DNA of 64,000 nucleotides from the NCBI RefSeq assembly GCF_020745735.1, contig NC_083409.1, forward strand, positions 20,904,098 through 20,968,097, in the 5' to 3' direction. The stretch's first letter is position 1. Each line of letters begins with the position of its first letter. Origin of the DNA: Hemiscyllium ocellatum (lineage: Eukaryota). Below the pieces are notes generated by a model. The model had not been told where the DNA came from. It worked only from the letters and a program-made list of their open reading frames with translations, and did not search any database. Both the position numbers and the translations under genes were made by a program. Shown piece by piece: positions 31,361 through 43,736 of this stretch.

Positions 31361-31652
31361 CAGGATCTGTGATAGGCTGAACATCATTTCAGGTGCTCCC
31401 AGGCTTACAACAGAGAGTGCACAGTGCAAACCCACCAGATGTGTCTGGACCAACAGAGTGAGGAGGGAATGCCTCAGATTGTAAGTATTGAGTCTCAACA
31501 GCTTTCAGTTTCTGTTCTGTTTGCAAAATTGACAGAATTCCAGATCAAATGGATCATTTAAAAGTGATTGCTGATTGTCTGTCAGTATCACATAGAACAG
31601 ACATGTAATTGATTGACAGGCAAAGTAGCCAATTGTGACAATGACCTGGTGA

Positions 31653-31960
31653 GGGGCGGCACGGTGGCACAGTGGTTAGCACTGCTGCCTCACAGCACCA
31701 GAGACCCGGGTTCAATTCCCACCTCAGGTGACTGACTGTGTGGAGTTTGCACGTTCTCCCCGTGTCTGCGTGGGTTTTCTCCGGGTGCTCCGGTTTCCTC
31801 CCACAGTCCAAAGATGTGCGGGTCAGGTGAATTGGCCATGCTAAATTGCCCGTAGTGTTAGGTAAGGGGTAAATGTAGGGGTATGGGTGGGTTGCGGGTC
31901 GGTGTGGACTTGTTGGGCCGAAGGGCCTGTTTCCACACTGTAAGTAATCTAATCTAAAAA
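31653..31960 (+). mobile_element. HE1-type SINE, young full-length copy
   Basis: ggggcggcacggtggcacagtggttagcactg ... taagtaatctaatctaa. Confidence 0.93.
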
Positions 31961-32439
31961 AATGCAGCCAATCAGTTCAGGGCAGCAGTCCATTTCCAAT
32001 GTACACAGCGGCAGGGGCCGTGGAGGGGTTCGTTAGGGCCGACTGCCTGCCCCTCTTCGGCGGTTACATTAGAGCCCGGGAGAAGGAGCACGGTGTCCAC
32101 CAACACCCTGGAGTTGTTCAGGGAGACGTGGGCACCGCAGGGAATGGAGTGCATCATTTCCCCCTCCAACTCTATTTTGATTTAGTCCCTGCCCTCCCCT
32201 TCACACAGCATTGCCCTTTGATGTGAAGGGCACTGCTTGTCACAGGCCACTCGGGTGTTTTCCTTGTCAGGAGTTGGACCAGTGGCAGTGTGTGCCTGAA
32301 AAAGGAGAAGAAGGAGAAGAAGAAAGAAGGAGAAAGAGAAGTACAAGAAGGAGGTGGAGGAAGGAGGTGAGAGCTTTGTGTTCTGGGCCTAGCTTTGGAG
32401 CTGCAGTGGGGCCCACTCCCACTGCTGGTCTCTGGGACC

Positions 32440-33330
32440 CTGCCTGGGCCTGCCTCCACCACCGCAGCCTGGGACTCGCCTGAGGCCCCTTCCCACAACC
32501 TCCACCACTGGTGTGACCTGAGGCCTACCTCCACTGCTGCTGCCTGGGACTTGCTTGGGAGTCCCTCCACTGCTGGGACGAAGGGCCAGCCTGGGACTCG
32601 CCAGAGGCCTGCCTCAACTGCTGCCGCAGCCAGAGGCCTGCCTCCACCAGCGCTGCCTGGGACTCGCCTGAGGCCCCTTCCCACAACCTCCACCGCTGCT
32701 GCGACCTGCGGCCTACCTCCACCACTGCTGCCTGGAACTCGCCTGGGAGTCCCTCCCCAAAAGGTCTGCCTCTACTGTTGGGACCAAGGGCCAGCCTGGG
32801 ACTCGCTAGAAGCCTGCCTCGACTGCTGCTGCCTGAGGCCTACCTCCACCACCGCAGCCTGGGACTCAGCTGAGGCCCCTTCCCCACAACCTCCACCACT
32901 GCTGCGGCCTGCCTCGACCGCCGCGGCCTGGGACTTACCTGGGAGTCCCTCCCCAACCGAGGGCCAGCCTGGGACTCGACAGAGGCTGCCTCAACTGCTG
33001 TTGCCTGAGGCCTGCCTCCACCACCGCAGCGTGGGACTCGCCTGAGGCCACTCCCCACAACCTCCACCACTGCTGCGACCCGAGGCCCACCTCCATCGCT
33101 GCTGCCCAGGACTCAGTTTTGGGGCTGCCTGGGACTTGTCTTGGGGACACACCCCAACATGCCTGCCCCCAACACTGCAATTGAGGGCCTGCCGAGGACT
33201 TGCCTGAGGCCTGCATCCACCACCGCTGCCTAGGACCTGCCTCGGGTGACTGGCCTTGGGCACCTCCCCAAGGACTCCACCGCTACTACTGCCAGAGGCC
33301 CACCTCCACCGCTGCTGCCGGGGGCCGACG
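32440..33330 (+). repeat. Tandem imperfect monomers in the B1 5'UTR
   Basis: Recurring gcctgggactcgcc(t/a)gaggcc...cctccacc(a/g)ctgc units; homologous array at 40440-41130. Confidence 0.85.
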
Positions 33331-33334
33331 GAGT

Positions 33335-35469
33335 ATGGCGAGCCCGAAGGTCGCAGGGCCCAGCCGGACCTACGCCGGGGTAGCCACTGCCTTAGGCTCG
33401 GCTGCCCCAACCCCGGCCGCAACTGCATCCCCCTTCAGGCACCTGACCAAACGCCTGGGGGGTAAAGGCCTATCCCCATCCCAACATGACCATCGAGGCC
33501 TGCAGTAAGGCCATGGCTAGTGTGGTCGGCCCACTGGCCATCGTCGCTGCGGCCCGCATGTACGGGAAGGCCGTATTCTTTCTTAAAACCGAGCAGGCGG
33601 TCCACCTGGCCGTGGAGAGGGGGCTCTCTGTGGGCGGGACACATTTGCCCGTCGACCCTTTGGAGGTCACGGCCCAGAGGGTTGTAATCTCCAACGTCCC
33701 GCCCTTTATTGCCAGTGAGCTCCTTCTTCCCCACCTCAACACCTTGGGGGAGATCCGGTCAGGTGTTCAACCGCTCCTGCTCGGTCTTAAGGACCCCGCC
33801 CTCCGTCACGTATACTTCTTCTGACGCCAGGTGTTTATTTGCTTGGCCCGGGAGGAGGTCACGGAGGGCTCGTTCACTGTCCTCCACGAGGTCGCGGCAT
33901 ACTGCGCCTTCTGGATGGCGGACGGCGTGCGGTGCCACCTGTGCCGCGAGGTGGGGCATATTAGAAAAAACTGCCCCACCCCGAAGGCTGCCCAGCCCAC
34001 ACCAACGGCTGCGGTTGGTGCTGCCGCACCCACTCCCCCTCCCCCAAAGTCAACACCAAAAGCCCCAGCACCGGGGGCTAAGCCGGAGGCTCCCAATGCA
34101 TCAGCCTCTGGCAGGGAGGGGGGTGAGCGTCCGACGGGACAGAAGGCGCTCAGGAAGACGCAACGCGTCAAGCCCGCCCACGAGGAGACCACCCTATCCC
34201 CATCCCCATCCCCTTCCCGTCCCCCTTCCCCTCCATGTAGCCCACGTCCTTCCCTGCCCCGGCACGACAATGCTCCTGCGGCCGTGCCAGCGTCGCCCCT
34301 GCGCGGGAACCCTGACCCCTGAACCCCCAAACCCGTACCTTATCCCGGTCCCACTGACCCTGACCCCGACCCCAACCCCCACCTCGTTACAGGAACACCT
34401 GGGGATTCAACCCCTCCTCCGGAAACCGAGCCACGCCCCGCCCCACCCCACCCCACCCAGCCATCCCCTGGCACTAACCTCGGGGGAACCACCGCTGCTC
34501 TACTTCCTGCAGTGACCGTGTCTCTGGGCCCTGGAGAGGAAACTGGGCCCCTGCCCCGCCCGCCATCACCTGATAAACCAGGGGCGGGGCAGGAAGTGAC
34601 ACGGCTGACCCTCCCCACATTGGCCATGCCCTCTGCCTTCCCCCAGCCAAACGTATTCCGGGAAAGGCTGGGTGGAGGGACCTCGGGCCCCATGACCACC
34701 AAGGCGGGCGGGGAGGGGAAGACCCATAAATTCCCCGTCACTCTGGGGAAAAGGCGCTGGCCCTTGGGGAGGGTGCCTCCCCACTGTCCTGCACCATGGC
34801 CCGACCTGCCTAAACCCCCAGGGGCGACAGCCGGGCCTTCCACCGCCATAACTCCTCCAGCCCCTGGGGAGGATTTTAATAACAACACGGGTCATGGTGC
34901 AGATGACAGTCTTGTATTCTCTGCTGGGTCGTCGAGCGGTGGAGGCGACCAGACTGTTTTTCCGGGGGCCTTGGCCCTGGGGGAGGACCTTTTCCCCGAG
35001 GAGATGGGCGTCCCTGTGTCGGGAGAGGAGCGGGGGCCCCGAGCCTCTGCCGCCCGGCGTCCCGAACTCGGGGTGTTCCGGGAAAGGGTGCGCCGAGGAA
35101 GGTACTGAAGGTGACCCTGGGGGTGGGGTCACTGGAGGTTTGAGGCCAGTTGGCGGTGCCGGACCAGCCCCCATCCTCTCGGTGGGGGAGGGGTCGGTGA
35201 CCGAAGGCGACCTCCCGGAGGAGGGTTCTGGATTGTTGGGGACACCAGGGACGACGTGGAGTCCGTCTCCAGTGAGATTTTTGAGTCCCAGGTGCCCCCC
35301 CACCGATCTCCCCCTCATCCCCCTCGAGGAACTCTGGGAATTTGTCGAGGAAACTCGGAGTTGCCGGGATAGAGCCCAACTGGCGCTCGACCACTGGAGC
35401 TCCTTTGAAAGAGTCTACTGGTCGGCCCACACTGCGCGCCAGGTGCCCGGACTTGACGCGAGTGACTGA
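33335..35469 (+). pseudogene. Tx1 ORF1 (gag-like, CCHC zinc knuckle, Pro-rich tail), disrupted
   Basis: MASPKVAGP... ATG at 33335; +1 frameshift in the G run near 33460; TGA at 33822-33824; CHLCREVGHIRKNC knuckle; VVISNVPPFI segment typical of Tx1 ORF1. The 3' end is uncertain. Confidence 0.85.
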
Positions 35470-35603
35470 AAGCGAGTCAGGAACTTCCTGGGAGCACTCC
35501 TGGTGAGGGAGAGGGACTTCTGTGCCCCTCTCTCATCCTCCCAGTAAAAATGTACTAGTTTTTGTTAACTGTTTACTGGTGGTGGTTGCACTATACTTCC
35601 GAC

Positions 35604-38600
35604 ATGGAGACAACTATAGCCAGCCTCAACATCAACGGCAGCAGGGAGTCACAGCACAGATTCTAGACCCCCTCGGTCCTTCGGGACGGGAGGTATGCGG
35701 TATGCTTCCTGCAAGAAACCCACACTACCCCGGGAGACGAAGCTACCTGGCTCCTGGAGTGGTGAGGGAGGTTCAATATGAGTCACCTAACCCGCAGATC
35801 TGGCGGGGTGGCTATCCTGTTGGCCTCGCATTTTCAGCAGGAGATGTTGGGGTTCAGGGAGCCAGTGCCAGGCCGTTTGCTTCACCTGACGGTTCGGCTG
35901 GGGGGCGCGGTGCTTCACTTGGTGAACGTCTACGCTCCCCTGGCCGGGCCGAGGCAAGCGAGCTTATTTGAAGAAGTTTCCGCTCATCTCGCTTCCATTG
36001 ACGAGAACCAATGCCGTCCTCGGGGGAGATTTTAACTGCGTCCTCGAGGACAGGGACCTCGAAGACAGGCCCGCACGAGTTAGGCGTCGGGGAGGAGGTT
36101 GGGGGACTTGATCAAGTCCTTGGACCTTTTGGACGTCTGGCGGAATCTCCATCCTGACTCCATCACCTCACCTACGTGAGGCCTGGGGTCGGAGCGTCCA
36201 GAATCGACCGCTTGTACGTTTCACGGGCGTACGCCTCCTGTTTTCCGAAGGCCTCCATGCGGCAGGTGTCGTGCATGGACCATCACCTGGTGTGGGCGGA
36301 ACTCCTTCCGTTCGGCGCCAGGTTGGGCTCCGCGTACTGTCACTTTAACAACCTGCTGCTGGAGGACGAGCGGTTCCAGGACTCGTTTCGTCGTTTCTGG
36401 GCTGGCTGGAGAAGGAAGCAGGGAAGCTTCCCCTCCTTGAGGCTATGGTGGGATGTGGGCAAGGCTCACGTCCACGTCTTCTGTCAGGAGTACGCGAGGG
36501 GGTCGACAAAGAGGCGGAAATCCAGGATCGGGGAGTTGGAGAGGGAGATGCTCGACCTGGAGTCACGCCTCGGTCAGCCTGACGCGGACCCGGCCCTGCA
36601 CGGAGTGTATGAAGAGAAGAAGGCCGCGCTCCGGGACCTGCAGCTCGTCGGGGCTTGGGGCGCGTACGTGAGGTCGCGGCTCCAGCTCTTCCAGGACCTG
36701 GACTGCGGCTCCCCCTTCTTCTACTCGCTGGAAAAAAGGCGTGGCACCCGTCAGCAGCTCCTTGTGCTGCTGGCCGACGACGGGTCCCTCGTCTCGGATC
36801 CGGAGGGTATCAGGGCCCACGTCCGATCCTATTACACGGCCCTGTTCTCTCCGGATCCGTCCAGCGAGGATGCTCGCAGAGTTCTGTGGGAGGACCTGCC
36901 ACAGCTCAGCCCGGAGGACGCCGGAAAGCTCGACGTTCCCGTCACCTTAGAGGAGCTGACCGGCGTCCTCGACCGGCTCTCGAGGGGCAAATCCCCGGGG
37001 CTGGACGGGCTGACTGTGGAGTTCTTCAGGGTGTTCTGGGACGTCCTGGGGAGCGACTACGCACAGGTCCTGGGGGAGTGTCTAAATGCCGGAGAGCTGC
37101 CCCTTTCTTGGCGCAGGGCGGTCATCGTCCTGCTGCCAAAGAAGGGGGACCTTCGTTCTTTGAAGAACTGGCGTCCGGTCTCCCTCCTCAGCACGGACTA
37201 CAAAATCTTCGCCAGGGTGTTGTCTTCTCGCCTGGCTTCCGTGCTGGCCCACATGATTCACCCGGACCAGTCCTACACGGTCCCGGGCTGGAGGATACAC
37301 GACAACTTCCATCTGTTCCAGGACCTGATCCATTTCTGTCGACGGACTGGTCTGCCGAGCGCCTTCCTGTCTCTCGATCAGGAGAAGGCGTTCGACAGGG
37401 TCGATCACGAGTACCTGCTCGGGACTCTGGGCATTCCGGTTCGGGACGCAGTTCGTCGCCCGGATCTGACGTTTGTACGCCGCCGCAGAGTGTCTGGTTA
37501 AAGCTAACGGGTCCCTGACTGCGCCCCTTCGCTTCGGGAGAGGAGTGCGTCAGGGCTGCCCCCTGTCTGGCTAGCTGTATTCCCTGTGCATGGAGCCTTT
37601 CCTGCGCCTCTTGCGGAGGAGGTTGTCGGGGCTGGTTCTGCGCGGCACGGGCACGGGGGTGGTCCTTTCGGCCTACGCCGACGACGTGCTCCTCACTTTT
37701 ACCGACCCGGCTGACCTGGGGAGGATGCGCAAGTGCCAGGCCGTGTACTCAGCGGCGTCTTCCGCCAGGATCAACTGGGCCAAATGTTCCGGGCTACTGG
37801 TGGGTCCGTGGCGGGTGGACTCCCTGCCGGAGGAGTTTCAGGGGTTCAGCTGGAATACCACCCATCTCCTCTACCTGGGGGTCTACCTCAGCCCAACCGA
37901 GGAATCCTGGCCGGCCAACTGGCAGGAGCTGGAGGCCAAAGTCTCGGCTCGCCTAGGCCGCTGGACAAGACTGCTCCGAGTGCTATCTTACAGGAGCCGA
38001 GTGCTGGTCATAAACCAACTGGTGGCCGCCATGCTGTGGTACCGGCTGGTCACTTTGGTCCCTCCTCCTGGCTTTGTCGCTGACATCCAGAGAACGTTGG
38101 TCGACTTCGTCTGGGACAAAAAGATGCACTGAATCGCTGCGCAGGTTCTGAGTCTCCCTATTGAGGAGGGCGGTCAGTCGCTGGTGTGCGTCCGCACCCA
38201 GGTCGCGACCTTCCGCCTTCAGACCTTGCAGCAATACCTTTATGTCGAGCCTCCTCCTAGGTGGTGCGCCCTGGCGACGTATTTTTTCCGCCAGGTGCGT
38301 AACCTCAACTACGACACGCAGCTCCTGTTCGTCGATCGTGATGGTTTGGAGGTCGCCCTCAAGGTGCTGCCTGTCTTTTACCAGGACCTGATCACTGTCT
38401 GGAACATGGTCGAATCGCGTCGTGCCTACCCTCCGGCAGGAGTAGCGGCTGTCGTCAGGGAGCCGTTGCTCAGGAATCCGCACCTCCGTGCTCGCGGGTT
38501 CGAGTGGCTGTTGGAGGGGAGGGCCGTGGCGGCGAGGGTTACCAGGGTCGGGGACGTGCTGGGTGCCGGGGGCCTGGGCTGGACGTTGCTGCAAGACATA

Positions 38601-39496
38601 GCGAGCAGGGCAGCGGTAGACGTCCGGTACGTGGCCACCGGCATCCTACGCCTTAAAACGGCGGTGCTCGGACCCGACGTAGTGCACCAGTTGGAGGACG
38701 CTCAGGTGTGCGGTGAGATCCCGTCCACGCTCACCCCTGCCCGGACGGAATTTCACATTGGCCCCAAGGTCCCGTACTTCCCGCGGGAGCCTGTGCCCCA
38801 CAACCTGAGCCGCCTCCGAAATTTTAATTTTGTCCCGTTCAAGGACGTTAAAAGGCGTGCCCTATGTTGACTGCTGCTGCACACCATCCACCTCTTCTCC
38901 CTCATCCACCGCCCGGACACGCCCTGGCGTGCCCATTTGACACCGGGCGGTGGGGATCCCCAGTGGAGGGCCCTCTTCGCAGGAGTCCTCCCCCTTTCTC
39001 TCGGGGATCTTTTGTGGAGGGTGCTGCATGCAGCAGTCCCCTGCAACCGCAGATTGCGGTGTTCATGGACTCCCAGCCCAACTGCTTGTTCTGTGTTGCT
39101 GTGGAGTCCGTGGACCATGTGTATATTGGGTGTGGGCGTTTGCACTCCCTCTTTGATTTTCTGAAAAACCTTCTCCTCTGTTTTTGGTTGCACTTCAGTC
39201 CCACGCTCCTGATCTTCGGGCACCCGGTGCGGAGGAGGGAAGGCAGGTCTGAAGACCTCCTTGTGGGTCTGCTCCTGGGCCTGGCCAAACTGGCCATAAA
39301 CAGGTCCGGGCAGCGGGCCGTGGAGGGGGTCGTTAGGGCCGACTGCCTGCCCCTCTTCCGCGGTTACGTTAGGGCCTGGGTGTCCTTGGAGAAGGAGCAC
39401 GCGGTGTCCACCAACACCCTGGAGTTGTTCAGGGAGAGGTGGACGCCGCAGGGAGTGGAGTGCATCATTTCCCCCTCCAACTCTATTTTGATTTAG
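35604..39496 (+). pseudogene. Tx1 ORF2 (AP endonuclease, reverse transcriptase, C-terminal Cys/His motif), disrupted
   Basis: METTIASLNING, FLQETH, VNVYAP, GGDFNC, SRIDRLY, KSPGLDGLTVEFF, WRPVSLLSTDYKI, LDQEKAFDRVDH, GVRQGCPLSG, YADD (37674-37685), CLFC...HVYIGC. Several stops and frameshifts. Confidence 0.95.
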
Positions 39497-40270
39497 TCCC
39501 TGCCCTCCCCTTCACTGTTTGTTCACACAGCATTGCCCCTTGATGTGAAGGCCACTGCTTGTCACAGGCCACTCGGGTGTTTTCCTACTTTTCCTGGTGG
39601 TGGAAATTGAATAAAGATTTGTACACCTTGTCTCTCACTGTGTCTCACAGCTGCACACACACACCATGGGTGCTGGGGATAAAAATAATAAGCACTACCA
39701 CAGTTAGGCGGTAGTGTGGGGGTTAATAAAAAAGAAAAAAAATATATAAACAAGAGACTTTTGATGTGAAGGGCACTGCTTGTCACAGGCCACTCGGGTG
39801 TTTTCCTATTTTTTCCTGGTGGTGGAAATTAAATAAAGATTTGTGCACTTTGTGTCTCTCACTGTGTCTCACACCTGCACACACACACCATGGGTGCTGG
39901 GGATAAAATAAGCACGACTGCAGTTAGGTCGTAGTGTGGGGGTAATAAAGGGGGAAAAAAATAATAAAAAAAACAAACAAAAAAATTCCAATGTACATAG
40001 CGGCAGGGGCTGTGGAGGGGTTCGTTAGGGCCGACTGCCTGCCCCTCTTCAGTGGTTACATTAGAGCCCGGGAGAAGGAGCACGGTGTCCACCAACACCC
40101 TGGAGTTGTTCAGGGAGACGTGGGCACCGCAGGGAATGGAGTGCATCATTTCCCCCTCCAACGCTCTTTTGATTTAGTCCCTGCCCTCCCCTTCACTGTT
40201 TGATCACACAGCATTGCCCTTTGATGTGAAGGGCACTGCTTGTCACAGGCCACTCGGGTGTTTTCCTGGT

Positions 40271-42283
40271 CAGGAGTTGGACCAGTGGCAGTGTGTGCCT
40301 GTGGAAGAAGAGAAAGAAGAAAGAAGAAAGAAGACGAAGAAGAAGAAGGTGGAGACAGGAGGTGAGAGCTTGGAGTCTCGGGCCTAGTTTTGGAGCTGCA
40401 GCCTGGGCATCACCCAGGTCAAGTCAGTGTTGCAGCTGACCTGGGGCCCACTCCCACTGCTGGTCTCTGGGATCCCGCCTGGGCCTGCCTCCACCACCGC
40501 AGCCTGGGAATCGCCTGAGGCCACTTTCCACAACTTCCACCACTGCTGTGACCTGTGGCCCACCTCCACCGCCGCTGCCTGGTACTCGCCTGGGAGTCCC
40601 TCCCCAACAGGTCTGCCTCCACTGCTGGGACAAAGGGCCAGCCTGGGATTCGCCAGAGGCCTTCCTCAACTGCTGCTGCTGCCAGAGGCCTGCCTCCACC
40701 ACCACTGCCTGGGACTTGCCTGGGAGTCCCTCCCCAACTGAGGGCCTGCCTGGGACTCGCCAGAGGCCTGCCTCAACTGCTGCTGTCACCTGAGGCTTGC
40801 CCCCACCACTGCAGCCTGGGACTCGTCTGAGGCCACTCCCCACAGCCTCCACCACTGCTGCGACCCGAGGCCCACCTCCACCGCTGCTGCCCAGGACTTA
40901 ATTTTGGGGCTGCCTGGGACTTGTCTTGGGGACCCTCCCCAACAGGCCTGCCCCTACCGGTGACCAAGGGCCTACCTGGGACTCGCCCGAAGCCTACCTC
41001 TGCCTCTGCCACTGCCGTTGCCTGAGGCCGGTTTCCACCGTCGCTGCCTGGGACTCTCCTCGGGTGACTGGCGTTGGGCACAACCCCAGGACTTCCGCCA
41101 CTACTACAGCCAAAGGCCCACCTCCAGCAGCAGAATATGGCGAGCCCGAAGGTCGCAGGGCCCAGCCACACCTACACCAGGGTAGCCACTGCCTTAGGCT
41201 TGGCTGTCCCAACCCCGGCCGCAACCGCATCCCCCTTCAGGCACCTGACCAAAACCTGGGGGTAAAGGCCTATCCCCATCCCAACATGACTCCTTCCGAC
41301 GCCAGGTGTTTATTTGCCTGGCCCGGGAGGAGGTCATGGAGGGCTCGTTCACTGTCCTCCACGAGGTCGCGGCATACTGCGCCTTCAAGGACGTTAAAAG
41401 GCGTGCCCTGTATAGACTGCTGCTGCACACCGTCCACCTCTTCTCTCTCATCCACAGTCCAGACACGCCTTGGCGTGCCCATTTGCCACCGAGCGGTGGG
41501 GATCCCCAGTGGAGGGCCCTCTTCGCAGGAGTTCTCCCCCTTTCTCTCGGGGATCTGGGGTGGAGGGTGGTGTACGCAGCGGTCCCTGCAACCGCAGATT
41601 GCGGTGGTTCACGGACTCCCAGCCCAACTGCTTGTTCTGTGGTGCTGTGGAGTCCGTGGACCATGTGTATATTGGGTGTGGGCGTTTGCACTCCCTCTTT
41701 GATTTTCTGAAAAACCTTCTCCTCTGTTTTTGGTTGCACTTCAGTCCCACGCTCCTGATCTTCGGGCACCCGGTGCGGAGGAGGGAGGGCAGGTCTGAAG
41801 ACCTCCTCGTGGGTCTGCTCCTGGGCCTGGCCAAGCTGGCCATAAAAAGGTCCAGGCAGTGGGCCGTGGAGGGGGTCGTTAGGGCCGACTGCCTGCCCCT
41901 CTTCCGCGGTTGCGTTAGAGCCCGGGTGTCCTTGGAGAAGGAGCACGCGGTGTCCACCAACACCCTGGAGTTGTGCAGGGAGAGGTGGGTGCCACAGGGA
42001 GTGGAGTGCATCATTTCCCCCTCCAACGCTATTTTGATTTAGTCCTTGCCCTCCCCTTCACTGTTTTGATCGCACAGCATTGCCCCTTTGATGTGAAGGG
42101 CACTGCTTGTCACAGGCCACTCGGGTGTTTCCTTTCTTCCTGGTGGTGGAAATTAAATAAAGATTTGTGCACTTTGTGTCTCTCACTGTGTCTCACACCT
42201 GCACACACACACCATGGGTGCTGGGGAAAATAAGCACTACCGCAGTTAGGCGGTAGTGTGGGGGAAAAGGGGGAAAAAAAAAG
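40271..42283 (+). mobile_element. Internally deleted Tx1-like element B2 (about 2.0 kb)
   Basis: Same 5' start caggagttggacc and ORF1 ATG at 41137. Lacks the equivalents of B1 33491-33815 and 33912-38840. Keeps the ORF2 end and 3'UTR. Confidence 0.92.
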
Positions 42284-43087
42284 AACAGGAGTGTAGCATT
42301 GCCCTCTGATGTGAAGGGCACTGCTTGTCACTAAAAAAAAATCCAATGTACACAGCAGCAGGGGCCGTGGAGGGGTTCGTTAGGGCCGACTGCCTGCCCC
42401 TCTTCGGCGGTTACATTAGAGCCCGGGAGAAGGAGCACGGTGTCCACCAACACCCTGGAGTTGTTCAGGGAGACGTGGGCGCCGCAGGGAATGGAGTGCA
42501 TCATTTCCCCCTCCAACGTTATTTTGATTTAGTCCCTGCCCTCCCCTTCACTGTTTGATCACACAGCATTGCCTTTTGATGTGAAGGGCACTGCTTGTCA
42601 CAGGCCACTCGGGTGTTTTCATATTTTTCCTGGTGGTGGAAATTGAATAAAGATTTCTGCACTTTGTGTCTCTCACTGCGTCTCACACTTGCACACACAC
42701 ACCATGGCTGCTGTGGAAAATATAAACACTACTGCAGTTAGAAAAAAAAACAAAAAAAAAAGAAAAAAATCCAATGTACACAGCCCTCCCCTTCGCTGTT
42801 TGATCATGTAGCATTGACCTTGAAAAAGGATACTGCTTGTCACTGGCCACATGGGTGTTTCCTTTCTTTCTGGTGGTGGAAATTGAATAAAGATTTATAT
42901 ACTTTGTGTCTTTCACTGTGTCCCACACCTGCATACACACAACATGGGAGCTGGGGAAAATATAAGCAGTACTACAGATAGGTGATAGTGGCGGTGCTAT
43001 AAAATAAAAGAAAAGGAGTGTCAGATATCCTCTCAATTAAAAAAAAAATCCAAAGTACACAAAGACAGCGACTGAATCCTCTTCATC

Positions 43088-43093
43088 TTTATT
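43088..43093 (-). promoter_or_regulatory. Probable polyadenylation signal of the Ig constant gene
   Basis: AATAAA on the minus strand about 320 nt after the C-exon stop, followed by a GT-rich stretch (GTCGCTGTCTTTGTGT). Confidence 0.65.
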
Positions 43094-43414
43094 ACCTTGA
43101 CCAGATTGACGTTGACAGAAAACAGTCAGCAATTAACAGCACAGACAGAGGAAGGTGCACAAATCACAGCCACAATGGAGCTTGAGGCAAAACACTTGTG
43201 GGGATTTTCTCAATAACATGAGAATCCTGTCCCTTTAAACAGTGACAAAACCTTAAAATGGAACTGGTCGCTGAGTAGGAAGGAGATCTGGTTTACTGAA
43301 GCAGAGACTTATGAGGTTCACATTGTTTTGTACAGCTGACAGTCTTCAGCAACTGCCACCTCAGCCCTGTTCTGTTTTTAAGTTGTGTCGCCTCCGTAGA
43401 CCGTCTCAAGCACT

Positions 43415-43736
43415 CTACACACATTCTGATCTCCTGATGCTCTTGCTGAGGGGAGAGGGGCGATCACCTGGGTGAGGGCAAAGGAGAAGCGAGCGTTGGA
43501 CTCCCAGTCAGCCCCAGAGAGGGTCAGCAGGCTGCTGACACTGTAGGTGCTGTCCGAAGCTCGCAGGTAGTTGCTGGTCTGAACCCCGTCCGAAATGACT
43601 GCACCGTCCTTCTTCCACTGCACCTCCAGCTCATCGGGATAGAAGTGATTGGCAAGACACACCAGGGTGGCAGTGCCCTTGGCATTGACCTGCTGCGGAG
43701 AGGGGGTCAGGAAGGTCAGCTAAGAGTTCTCATAGC
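43415..43736 (-). pseudogene. IGKC: Immunoglobulin light-chain constant exon, shark NS4/type III (kappa)-like, pseudogene
   Basis: Acceptor tttctcttgtctttcag, then YENS*LTFLTPSPQQVNAKGTATLVCLANHFYPDELEVQWKKDG...STYSVSSLLTLSGADWESNARFSFALTQV; a shifted frame gives PLSKSIRRSECV*. TAG at 43720-43722, Cys to Phe in FSC, and a frameshift near 43460. The kappa call rests on my recall of shark NS4 sequence. Confidence 0.88.

What the first reader, a model, noticed from the sequence alone, without database searches (positions are those of the whole stretch)
31995..43061. Repeated insertion of a Tx1-clade retrotransposon at one 13-bp site just past the Ig light-chain poly(A) signal
Seen: TCCAA(T/A)GTACA(C/T)A occurs at 31995, 39987, 42342, 42770 and 43049. 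The last four directly follow an A-rich tail, and the first four are directly followed by a 5'-truncated Tx1 3' end. There are two different truncation points (ORF2 end for A1-A3, 3'UTR for D at 42783), and the rightmost copy D is the most diverged. Joining the outer flanks gives a site 27-40 nt downstream of the C-gene AATAAA. Known: Tx1-clade families (Tx1L/Tx2L, Keno, Dewa, Kibi, Koshi) target multicopy sequences, and shark Ig light-chain genes are multicopy clusters. Inference: the motif is a target-site duplication reused by successive insertions, possibly from a Tx1 family specific for Ig light-chain cluster 3' flanks. I know of no such described family, but I cannot search to confirm.
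Basis: partly seen in the sequence, partly recalled or inferred. Interest (0 to 1): 0.82.

Follow-up and report, generated by a model that had tools for sequence, protein, structure and literature searches.

The report
Tx1 LINE stack behind antibody gene
A shark Tx1-type jumping gene has landed several times at one 13-base spot just behind an antibody light-chain gene. This is an off-target hit by an abundant family whose usual landing site lies in a common LTR repeat, a known Tx1 habit and not an antibody-gene-specific element.

Summary
TCCAAWGTACAYA occurs five times on the + strand (0.3 expected) and separates four units of one LINE family, antisense to an Ig light-chain-type C exon.

It is a true target-site duplication. 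28 of 30 paralogous Ig C 3' flanks are empty sites with one motif copy. Only this window and one 97%-identical paralog are filled.

The element is Tx1-clade: 55% identity to Xenopus Tx1 ORF2, against 21-23% to L1 ORF2p.

The proposed Ig-specific family is refuted. The family had at least 2,000 first-look matches, with unrelated flanks. Its main target is the TATA region of a ~230-bp LTR-like repeat. Earlier reports of this scan found that target on other DNA of this genome.

New here: the Ig site, other non-LTR sites and the LTR share CCAATCAG 19-20 nt upstream of the duplication. That would explain site re-use, because the motif survives each insertion.

A1-A3 share a private 5' junction and a private 9-nt deletion but have unrelated 3' tails.

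Stacks that sandwich a duplication are published for Tx1-mobilised elements (PMC4494074).

Verdict: a new member of a known kind. The distal-motif lead is testable.

The parts
31968..31975 (+). CCAATCAG box, 19 nt upstream of the first duplication copy. It is the proposed distal targeting determinant and stays intact after every insertion.
   Evidence: the same motif sits at the same distance in independent loci (L008, L020; CCAATCAC in L002; all LTR-type sites). One search adds further non-LTR sites.
31995..32007 (+). Duplication copy 1 (TCCAATGTACACA), the copy nearest to CCAATCAG
   Evidence: Empty paralogous sites have a single copy, TCCAAAGCACACA.
32008..39986 (+). Unit A1, a near-full-length degraded Tx1-clade LINE. 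Head 32008-32270 repeats the ORF2-end/3'UTR start. 5'UTR with 75-nt tandem repeats from 32271. CCHC remnant 33831-34322. APE remnant 35673-36176. RT 36197-37889. Second copy of the repeated region 39318-39590. 3'UTR to 39722. Tail plus LTR-type linker ATAAACAAGAGACT 39746-39759. Second 3'UTR fragment 39760-39942. Tail 39943-39986.
39987..39999 (+). Duplication copy 2 (TCCAATGTACATA)
40000..42341 (+). Unit A2. Same head and 5'UTR as A1, then an internal deletion that joins about 41386 to the ORF2 end. 3'UTR, tail, linker GAACAGGAGTGT 42283-42294, a 38-nt fragment of another unit 42295-42332, and A9.
42342..42354 (+). Duplication copy 3 (TCCAATGTACACA)
42355..42769 (+). Unit A3. The head region continues straight into the 3'UTR, which is cut short at ...CTGCAGTTAG, followed by an A-rich tail. 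Its counterpart in the paralog is P2.
42770..42782 (+). Duplication copy 4 (TCCAATGTACACA)
42783..43048 (+). Unit D, the oldest unit, containing only the 3'UTR. Its tail carries the linker AAAAGGAGTGT 43011-43021, 17 nt resembling the LTR's right flank 43022-43038, and A10.
   Evidence: Its counterpart in the paralog is P3.
43049..43061 (+). Duplication copy 5 (TCCAAAGTACACA). It keeps the A at position 6 that the empty sites have.
43089..43094 (-). AATAAA poly(A) signal of the Ig light-chain-type gene
   Evidence: Read directly. It is conserved in 30 paralogs.
43378..43662 (-). Open part of the Ig constant-domain exon (C1-set)
   Evidence: PF07654, E 5e-14; the best solved relatives are antibody light-chain constant domains.

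Best explanation
An abundant Tx1-clade LINE inserts by target-primed reverse transcription at a fixed distance, 19-20 nt, downstream of a CCAATCAG box. Each insertion makes a 13-15-bp duplication. The family's usual target is the TATA region of a ~230-bp LTR-like repeat. The spot behind this Ig light-chain gene is an accidental look-alike, with the same box and spacing and a similar local context. The box lies outside both the duplication and the insert. The duplication copy next to it therefore remains a valid target, and later RNAs enter there. The stack grew on the box-proximal (left) side, so D is the oldest unit. Every unit is bracketed by the same 13-mer. At least four RNAs entered in this window (D, A3, A2, A1) and a fifth (P1) in the paralog. 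Their source copies sat in the LTR, since their tails carry the LTR's duplication as 3' transduced sequence. D and A3 were in place before the Ig cluster duplicated. New units inherited the resident unit's 5' junction and adjacent ~260 nt. This happened either by homology-guided attachment of the new cDNA to the resident copy or by later gene conversion. Shown here: the duplication, the empty sites, the clade, the abundance, the LTR target, the motif association and the private junction. Inferred: the direction of growth and the way 5' ends are inherited. It is also inferred that CCAATCAG is read by the element or by a bound host factor.
For: The duplication is real: one search shows 28 of 30 paralogous sites with one motif copy and the joined flanks. 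The clade is Tx1: one search gives 55% identity to Tx1 ORF2 P14381 over 399 residues, against 21-23% to L1 ORF2p. One search supports this, and maps APE and RT. The family is not Ig-specific. The LTR target is seen. Ten or eleven arrays in a sample of 30 loci, chosen only by 3'UTR similarity, sit at CCAATCAG-N19-ATAAACAGGAGTGT inside one ~230-bp repeat. Among about 11 non-LTR sites, CCAATCAG is exact at 19-20 nt in 3 (Ig, L008, L020). It is CCAATCAC in L002 and CCAGTCAT in L005. The chance of an exact 8-mer at a fixed place is 1.5e-5 per site. One search finds further non-LTR sites on C14, C19, C60 and C189, with 0 hits for the reversed control. The units came from separate RNAs: the tails of A1, A2, A3, D and P1 differ in linker, in transduced fragment and in its start point. 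A1 and A2 are only 88-89% identical in the 5'UTR. Growth was on the left: the rightmost duplication copy keeps A at position 6 like the empty sites, while the other four share T. D is the most diverged unit. Stacking is general for the family. Full-length copies lie 7.1-8.6 kb apart at six other loci. Arrays whose units share a 5' start but differ in tails occur in L003, L013, L014, L018 and L025. Kojima 2015 (PMC4494074) describes Tx1 families that target LTR retrotransposons, and tandem insertions sandwiching a duplication that arose by sequential insertion.
Against: CCAATCAG-N19 is not sufficient. 13 sampled Ig paralogs carry it exactly and are empty. The inverted CCAATCAG of the LTR shows no insertion in L004. 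Four of about 11 non-LTR sites (L010, L011, L021, L024) show no such motif. One search required the motif, so it cannot give frequencies. The duplication's left edge is uncertain by 1-2 nt where the tail is A-rich. The junction TSD|GC-GGCAG and a 9-nt deletion are shared by A1, A2, A3, P1 and P2 and occur nowhere else in the genome. Plain independent insertion does not predict this. The head regions of A1, A2 and A3 are 97-98% identical. A DNA-level process is therefore also involved.
Confidence: 0.7

Rival explanations
1. There were only one or two retrotransposition events (D and one full-length copy). The rest of the array arose at the DNA level, by unequal exchange or slippage between the 13-bp repeats and between the repeated head and ORF2-end blocks. 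Deletions then followed.
For: A1, A2 and A3 share a private 5' junction and a private 9-nt deletion. Their head blocks are 97-98% identical and cluster together with P1 and P2. A3 and P1 look like products of recombination between the head and the ORF2-end repeat.
Against: The 3' ends cannot be derived from one another. A2's transduced fragment starts 9 nt upstream of A1's. The linkers differ (ATAAACAAGAGACT, GAACAGGAGTGT, none). P1 differs again. A1 and A2 are no closer in the 5'UTR (88-89%) than unrelated genomic full-length copies are to A2 (86-88%). A 13-bp repeat is a poor substrate for duplicating an 8-kb unit. The same pattern of shared 5' start with different tails recurs in unrelated arrays.
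Confidence: 0.15
2. One complex event built the array. During a single target-primed reverse transcription the enzyme jumped repeatedly between RNA templates and the target overhang, laying down several units and several duplication copies at once.
For: End-to-end chimeras are common in this family. Tails are followed directly by 5' ends of other RNAs, namely RPS15A mRNA in L019 and a SINE fragment in L024.
Against: D is much more diverged than A1-A3. The A-to-T change in the duplication separates D's outer copy from all the others. The paralog has a different set of left-hand units but the same A3 and D, so the units were added at different times. The L019 retrocopy has its own tail and its own duplication, so it is a separate insertion.
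Confidence: 0.08
3. One reading: a Tx1 family specialised for the 3' flank of Ig light-chain clusters, recognising the 13-mer itself.
For: The insertions lie at a conserved position in a multicopy gene family, and Tx1 relatives do target multicopy sequences (PMC4494074).
Against: Flanks of about 60 genomic 3' ends lack the 13-mer. 28 of 30 paralogous sites are empty. The junction exists only in this lineage. The family's dominant target is an LTR-like repeat.
Confidence: 0.02

Closest known systems
Crocodilian Tx1 families Tx1-8_Crp and Tx1-4_AMi, and Tx1-Mar with its SINEU partners (Kojima 2015, PMC4494074)
   Same: These are Tx1-clade LINEs preferentially inserted into particular transposons, including LTR retrotransposons. 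Tandem insertions 'sandwiching a TSD' are explained there by sequential insertion, and other RNAs are mobilised into the same site. The nearest proteins to this element are from turtles.
   Different: The paper as read here names no distal CCAAT-type determinant. This element carries a head copied from its own ORF2 end, not an snRNA-derived head. The shark family and its Ig off-target site are not in that paper.
Xenopus Tx1L inserted in the Tx1D transposon (the prototype; Christensen et al. 2000, as cited in PMC4494074)
   Same: 55% ORF2 identity. It is a site-specific LINE that lives inside another repeated element and forms composites.
   Different: The target is a different sequence in a different kind of element: piggyBac-type Tx1D there, an LTR-like promoter here. 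From my own knowledge, Tx1L specificity is attributed to its endonuclease acting at the nick site. Here an 8-bp motif about 20 bp from the nick is implicated.
R2 elements, and Dictyostelium TRE5-A / yeast Ty3 (recalled from memory, as analogies only)
   Same: Target choice is set by DNA contacts or host factors at a distance from the cleavage site, so the site can be re-used or is defined by a promoter complex.
   Different: These have different clades and enzymes (a restriction-like endonuclease in R2, an integrase in Ty3) and different targets (rDNA, Pol III genes). No membership is claimed.
Earlier reports of this scan on the same genome (s1-146972, s1-146970, s1-146932, s1-146971)
   Same: They describe the same family behaviour: stacks of poly(A) retroposons and host mRNA copies at one spot in the TATA region of a short LTR.
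   Different: Those are LTR sites. This window is a non-LTR, gene-adjacent off-target that shares only the CCAATCAG box, the spacing and the local nick context with the LTR.

Membership tests
Tx1 clade of non-LTR retrotransposons | Reverse transcriptase closest to Tx1-type ORF2 rather than to L1 or other clades | tested here: met
   the top Swiss-Prot match is P14381, Transposon TX1 149 kDa protein, at 55% identity over 399 residues. L1 ORF2p entries reach 21-23%, and R1 and jockey 14-18%; the best solved relative is L1 ORF2p (E 3e-33), far ahead of R2.
Tx1 clade of non-LTR retrotransposons | APE-type endonuclease N-terminal to the RT | tested here: inconclusive
   35673-36176 aligns with the N-terminal part of homologues that carry PF03372; only a sub-threshold Exo_endo_phos remnant is found (E 0.019). 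The copy is frameshifted.
Tx1 clade of non-LTR retrotransposons | Placement inside Tx1 in a formal RT phylogeny with curated references (RTclass1/Repbase) | not tested
   No curated Tx1 reference set is available in these tools.
Target-specific Tx1 families | Insertions concentrated at one sequence of a repeated target, in one orientation, with a duplication of constant length | tested here: met
   10-11 of about 21 array boundaries lie at the same position of one ~230-bp repeat. All are in the same orientation, with 13-15-bp duplications.
   the flanks are unrelated; the junction occurs only in this lineage.
   28 of 30 are empty.
Target-site duplication | A single copy at an uninterrupted empty site whose flanks match both outer flanks of the insertion | tested here: met
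   ...gcagCCAATCAG-N19-TCCAAAGCACACA-GAGACAG...TTTATT in the paralogs. Both flanks match the window at 31960-31994 and 43062 onward.
NF-Y (CCAAT-box factor) tethered integration | Physical dependence of insertion on a bound host factor | not testable with these tools
   Only the sequence association is shown. That CCAATCAG is the optimal NF-Y site is recalled from memory.

The most novel reading that the evidence does not exclude
The element reads a CCAAT box about 20 bp away from its nick site. It does so either with a DNA-binding part of its own proteins or by docking on promoter-bound NF-Y. On this reading it homes to promoters and places itself, and any RNA it copies, between the CCAAT/TATA elements and the transcription start. 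The Ig flank and the other non-LTR sites would be natural 'mutants' that define the minimal target.
Probability: 0.4. Interest if true: 0.7.

Novelty: new member of a known kind. Interest (0 to 1): 0.42.

Why it matters
For Ig biology this is ordinary. One lineage of light-chain clusters carries an 11-kb antisense retroelement stack just past its poly(A) site, and no element is dedicated to Ig genes.

For transposon biology, the off-target site adds something the LTR copies cannot. The LTR copies are all alike, so they cannot show which bases matter. The Ig site, L008, L020 and L002 share with the LTR only a CCAATCAG box at a fixed distance and a short nick context. That turns 'how do Tx1-type LINEs choose their sites' into a directly testable hypothesis. 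It also explains why their sites regenerate.

The shared 5' junctions combined with unrelated tails point to homology-guided completion of insertion, a poorly understood step of LINE integration.

Tried and rejected
- Pfam on the long open pieces found RT but no endonuclease. Shorter pieces and tblastn with homologues were needed.
- I first read the recurrent 'ACAGGAGTGT' after the tails as an element-encoded 3' end or as the 5' end of the element. I rejected this when the same sequence appeared as the uninterrupted LTR site, with LTR flanks on both sides.
- I considered that GGCAG... is the canonical 5' end of full-length RNA, so that the A1-A3 junctions could be independent. I rejected this. 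Canonical heads start about 15 nt further 5'. The junction and the 9-nt deletion are unique to this lineage.
- One search used too narrow a gap (30-38) and found only the Ig loci. One search repeated it with 28-52.
I made no attempt to fetch them another way, so a genome-wide flank table was not possible.
- One search failed because the machine was busy and was repeated.
- source names of the homologues were uninformative ('unnamed protein product'). The clade came instead.
- the structure model is of modest quality (pLDDT 66). I used it only to reach the Swiss-Prot sequence comparison.
- I considered P1 of the paralog as the counterpart of A1. I rejected this because the tails and the fragment start points differ too much for clusters that are about 97% identical.
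Full report
**1. The observation.**
The pattern TCCAAWGTACAYA occurs at 31995, 39987, 42342, 42770 and 43049 on the + strand. Chance expects 0.30 matches. Reading the sequence confirms the rest of the description. Each of the last four copies follows an A-rich tail, and each of the first four is followed by sequence of one repeat family.

The Ig part also holds:
- A C1-set constant-domain exon lies on the minus strand at about 43378-43662.
- Its best solved relatives are antibody light-chain constant domains.
- Its AATAAA is at 43094-43089, so the rightmost motif copy lies 28-40 nt downstream of it.
- The retroelements are antisense to the Ig gene.

**2. The motif is a real target-site duplication.**
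I searched the whole genome with the C-gene 3' flank. This gave 365 first-look candidates, and 30 loci were fetched.
- In 28 of the 30, the flank continues uninterrupted through a single motif copy, TCCAAAGCACACA.
- In the 20 of these that carry the CCAATCAG-type left flank, it runs on into sequence homologous to the window's left flank at 31960-31994.
- Only the window and one paralog at C9:5.77 Mb are filled. That paralog's flank is 97% identical to the window's, against 92-94% for the others.
- The element junction TCCAATGTACAYA-RC-RGCAG exists only in these two loci, apart from two one-mismatch matches: one on an unplaced contig (C1069) and one on C16 that is probably chance.

**3. What the element is.**
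- The 441-residue open piece at 36176-37501 carries an RVT_1 domain.
- Its best solved relative is human L1 ORF2p (E 3e-33), far ahead of R2.
- A model built on an alignment of homologues matches Swiss-Prot P14381, the Xenopus Tx1 149-kDa ORF2 protein, at 55% identity over 399 residues. L1 ORF2p entries reach 21-23%.
- tblastn with homologues that carry both Exo_endo_phos and RVT_1 maps an endonuclease remnant to 35673-36176 and the RT to 36197-37889, across frameshifts.
- A borderline CCHC knuckle lies at 33831-34322.

The Tx1 assignment is therefore well supported, although no formal phylogeny with curated references was possible.

**4. Anatomy of the four units.**
- **A1 (32008-39986)** is a near-full-length, decayed copy. 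Its first 263 nt repeat the ORF2-end/3'UTR-start region. They are joined to a 5'UTR that holds 75-nt tandem repeats. This head-to-5'UTR junction is a family feature. At least 25 copies on other chromosomes match A2's first 460 nt from the same point onward. Canonical heads begin about 15 nt further 5', at CCATAAACAGGTCCAGGCAG.
- **A2 (40000-42341)** has the same head and 5'UTR, with an internal deletion.
- **A3 (42355-42769)** joins the head directly to the 3'UTR.
- **D (42783-43048)** is 3'UTR only.

**5. The family is abundant and not Ig-specific.**
The 3'UTR alone gives 1,994 first-look candidates. About 60 tails in 30 loci have flanks unrelated to the 13-mer. Those loci were chosen only by 3'UTR similarity.

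Most tails end in a variant of ATAAACAGGAGTGT. Mapping the arrays showed that this is the duplication of the family's main target, a dispersed repeat of about 230 bp. The repeat:
- starts TGTAGTGATTG...;
- holds two inverted CCAAT boxes and a TATA-like box (gATATAAAcagg);
- has an AATAAA about 75 nt further on.

These features are LTR-like. Ten or eleven of about 21 visible array boundaries lie at exactly this position, always in the same orientation. After I had seen this, the scan's notebook showed that earlier reports on other pieces of this genome describe the same LTR-TATA landing site. They call the repeat Gypsy-type, which I did not test.

**6. The new lead: a distal CCAATCAG.**
In the LTR, the duplication starts 19 nt after CCAATCAG. 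The same is true elsewhere:
- at the Ig site (CCAATCAG at 31968-31975, then 19 nt, then the 13-mer);
- at two unrelated sites, L008 (duplication ATAAATGTTGTCTT) and L020 (AACACTCTTTTGTT, spacing 19-20);
- with one mismatch (CCAATCAC) at L002;
- with two mismatches at L005.

An exact 8-mer at a fixed place has a chance of 1.5e-5 per site. Three exact hits among about 11 non-LTR sites is therefore far beyond chance.

A pattern search that required the box 28-52 nt upstream of a full-length head found further non-LTR sites on C14, C19, C60 and C189. The reversed control gave no hits. That search cannot give frequencies.

The box is not sufficient:
- 13 sampled Ig paralogs have it at the right distance and are empty.
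- Four non-LTR sites lack it.
- The filled Ig lineage differs from the empty ones in the 19-nt spacer, so a local nick context must also count.

No paper in the searchable library links CCAAT with Tx1 targeting.

**7. Why the 13-mer is re-used.**
The box lies outside both the duplication and the insert. After an insertion, the duplication copy next to the box is still at the right distance, so the next RNA enters there and copies the 13-mer again. This predicts growth on the box-proximal side. Three observations fit:
- The rightmost copy (43049) keeps A at position 6, as the empty sites do. The four copies to its left share T. The paralog shows the same pattern.
- D, the rightmost unit, is the most diverged. 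Its 3'UTR has a median identity of 84% to a panel of genomic copies, against 90-93% for the others.
- The paralog shares D and A3 but has a different left-hand unit, P1.

**8. Separate RNAs, shared 5' ends.**
The tails show that the units came from different RNAs, and that the source copies sat in the LTR:
- A1 carries the linker ATAAACAAGAGACT plus a 183-nt piece of a following unit.
- A2 carries GAACAGGAGTGT plus a 38-nt piece that starts 9 nt further 5', then A9.
- D carries AAAAGGAGTGT plus 17 nt resembling the LTR's right flank, then A10.
- A3 carries none, and P1 differs again.

These read as 3' transduction. The transcript was cleaved a few tens of nt past an AATAAA in the tail.

Yet A1, A2, A3, P1 and P2 share features that plain independent insertion does not predict:
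- They have one junction (the 13-mer, two filler bases, then GGCAG) and one 9-nt deletion. Both occur nowhere else in 4 Gb.
- Their head blocks cluster together.
- The head blocks of A1, A2 and A3 are 97-98% identical, while the adjoining 5'UTR of A1 and A2 is only 88-89% identical.

The same combination, identical 5' starts with different tails, recurs in unrelated arrays L003, L013, L014, L018 and L025. My preferred reading, which is inferred, is that the 3' end of each new cDNA pairs with the homologous resident unit just downstream. It is completed on that unit and so inherits the resident's junction and the 13-mer. Repeated gene conversion is the alternative.

**9. Comparison with what is known.**
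Kojima 2015 (PMC4494074) describes the following:
- Tx1 families with target preference for transposons, including LTR retrotransposons;
- tandem insertions 'sandwiching a TSD' that arise by sequential insertion;
- mobilisation of other RNAs into the same sites.

This window shows the same behaviour. An RPS15A processed retrocopy with its own tail and duplication sits at the LTR site in L019.

The finding is thus a new member of a known kind, and the scan had already met the family on other DNA of this genome. Two things go beyond the known picture and remain to be proven. One is the distal CCAATCAG determinant, which is an optimal NF-Y-type box as far as I recall. The other is the homology-guided inheritance of 5' junctions.

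**10. Verdict.**
Duplication re-use by a Tx1 element holds. An Ig-specific family does not.
- Interest is moderate.

Noticed in passing
window 31652-31960: A tRNA-type shark SINE copy sits 8 nt upstream of the CCAATCAG box. It is absent from the filled paralog, so it was inserted after the cluster duplication.
   Followed up: partly
L019:1724-2190: An RPS15A processed retrocopy sits at the LTR landing site. It has a 5' TOP start, a coding region with a frameshift, its own poly(A) tail and its own copy of the LTR duplication. A LINE unit is stacked on its left.
   Followed up: yes
G000 C49:2992698-3007356, C18:26169213-26176799, C1:48233977-48242333, C55:60314175-60322355, C4:103154814-103163784, C18:47793272-47802282: Full-length heads recur 7.1-8.6 kb apart, which suggests head-to-tail arrays of whole elements at several loci. 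The sequences could not be fetched.
   Followed up: no
window 32421-33255 and 40456-41073: The element's 5'UTR contains 14 copies of a GC-rich unit of about 75 nt (family D2). Their function is unknown.
   Followed up: no
L033, L039, L040, L049, L051-L054 versus L034-L038, L041-L048, L050, L055-L060: The Ig C 3' flanks fall into classes. Eight sampled copies lack the CCAAT-rich block entirely. Five carry it with an inverted segment, reading ACAATCAG. The window lineage has its own 19-nt spacer.
   Followed up: partly
one search hit list: The nearest named proteins to this shark RT come from sea turtles and other turtles (50-55% identity). Teleost hits reach only 38-43%.
   Followed up: no
L024, about 100 nt after the match at 1501-1681: A 44-nt 5' fragment of the shark SINE follows an LTR-type linker and is itself followed by an A-run. 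It is another short foreign piece in a stack.
   Followed up: no
L004, L013, L014, L018, L025 (LTR left halves): The LTR-like repeat carries two CCAAT boxes as a near-perfect inverted repeat (CCCTGATTGG ... gttaac ... CCAATCAGGG). Only the box facing the TATA side is used.
   Followed up: partly
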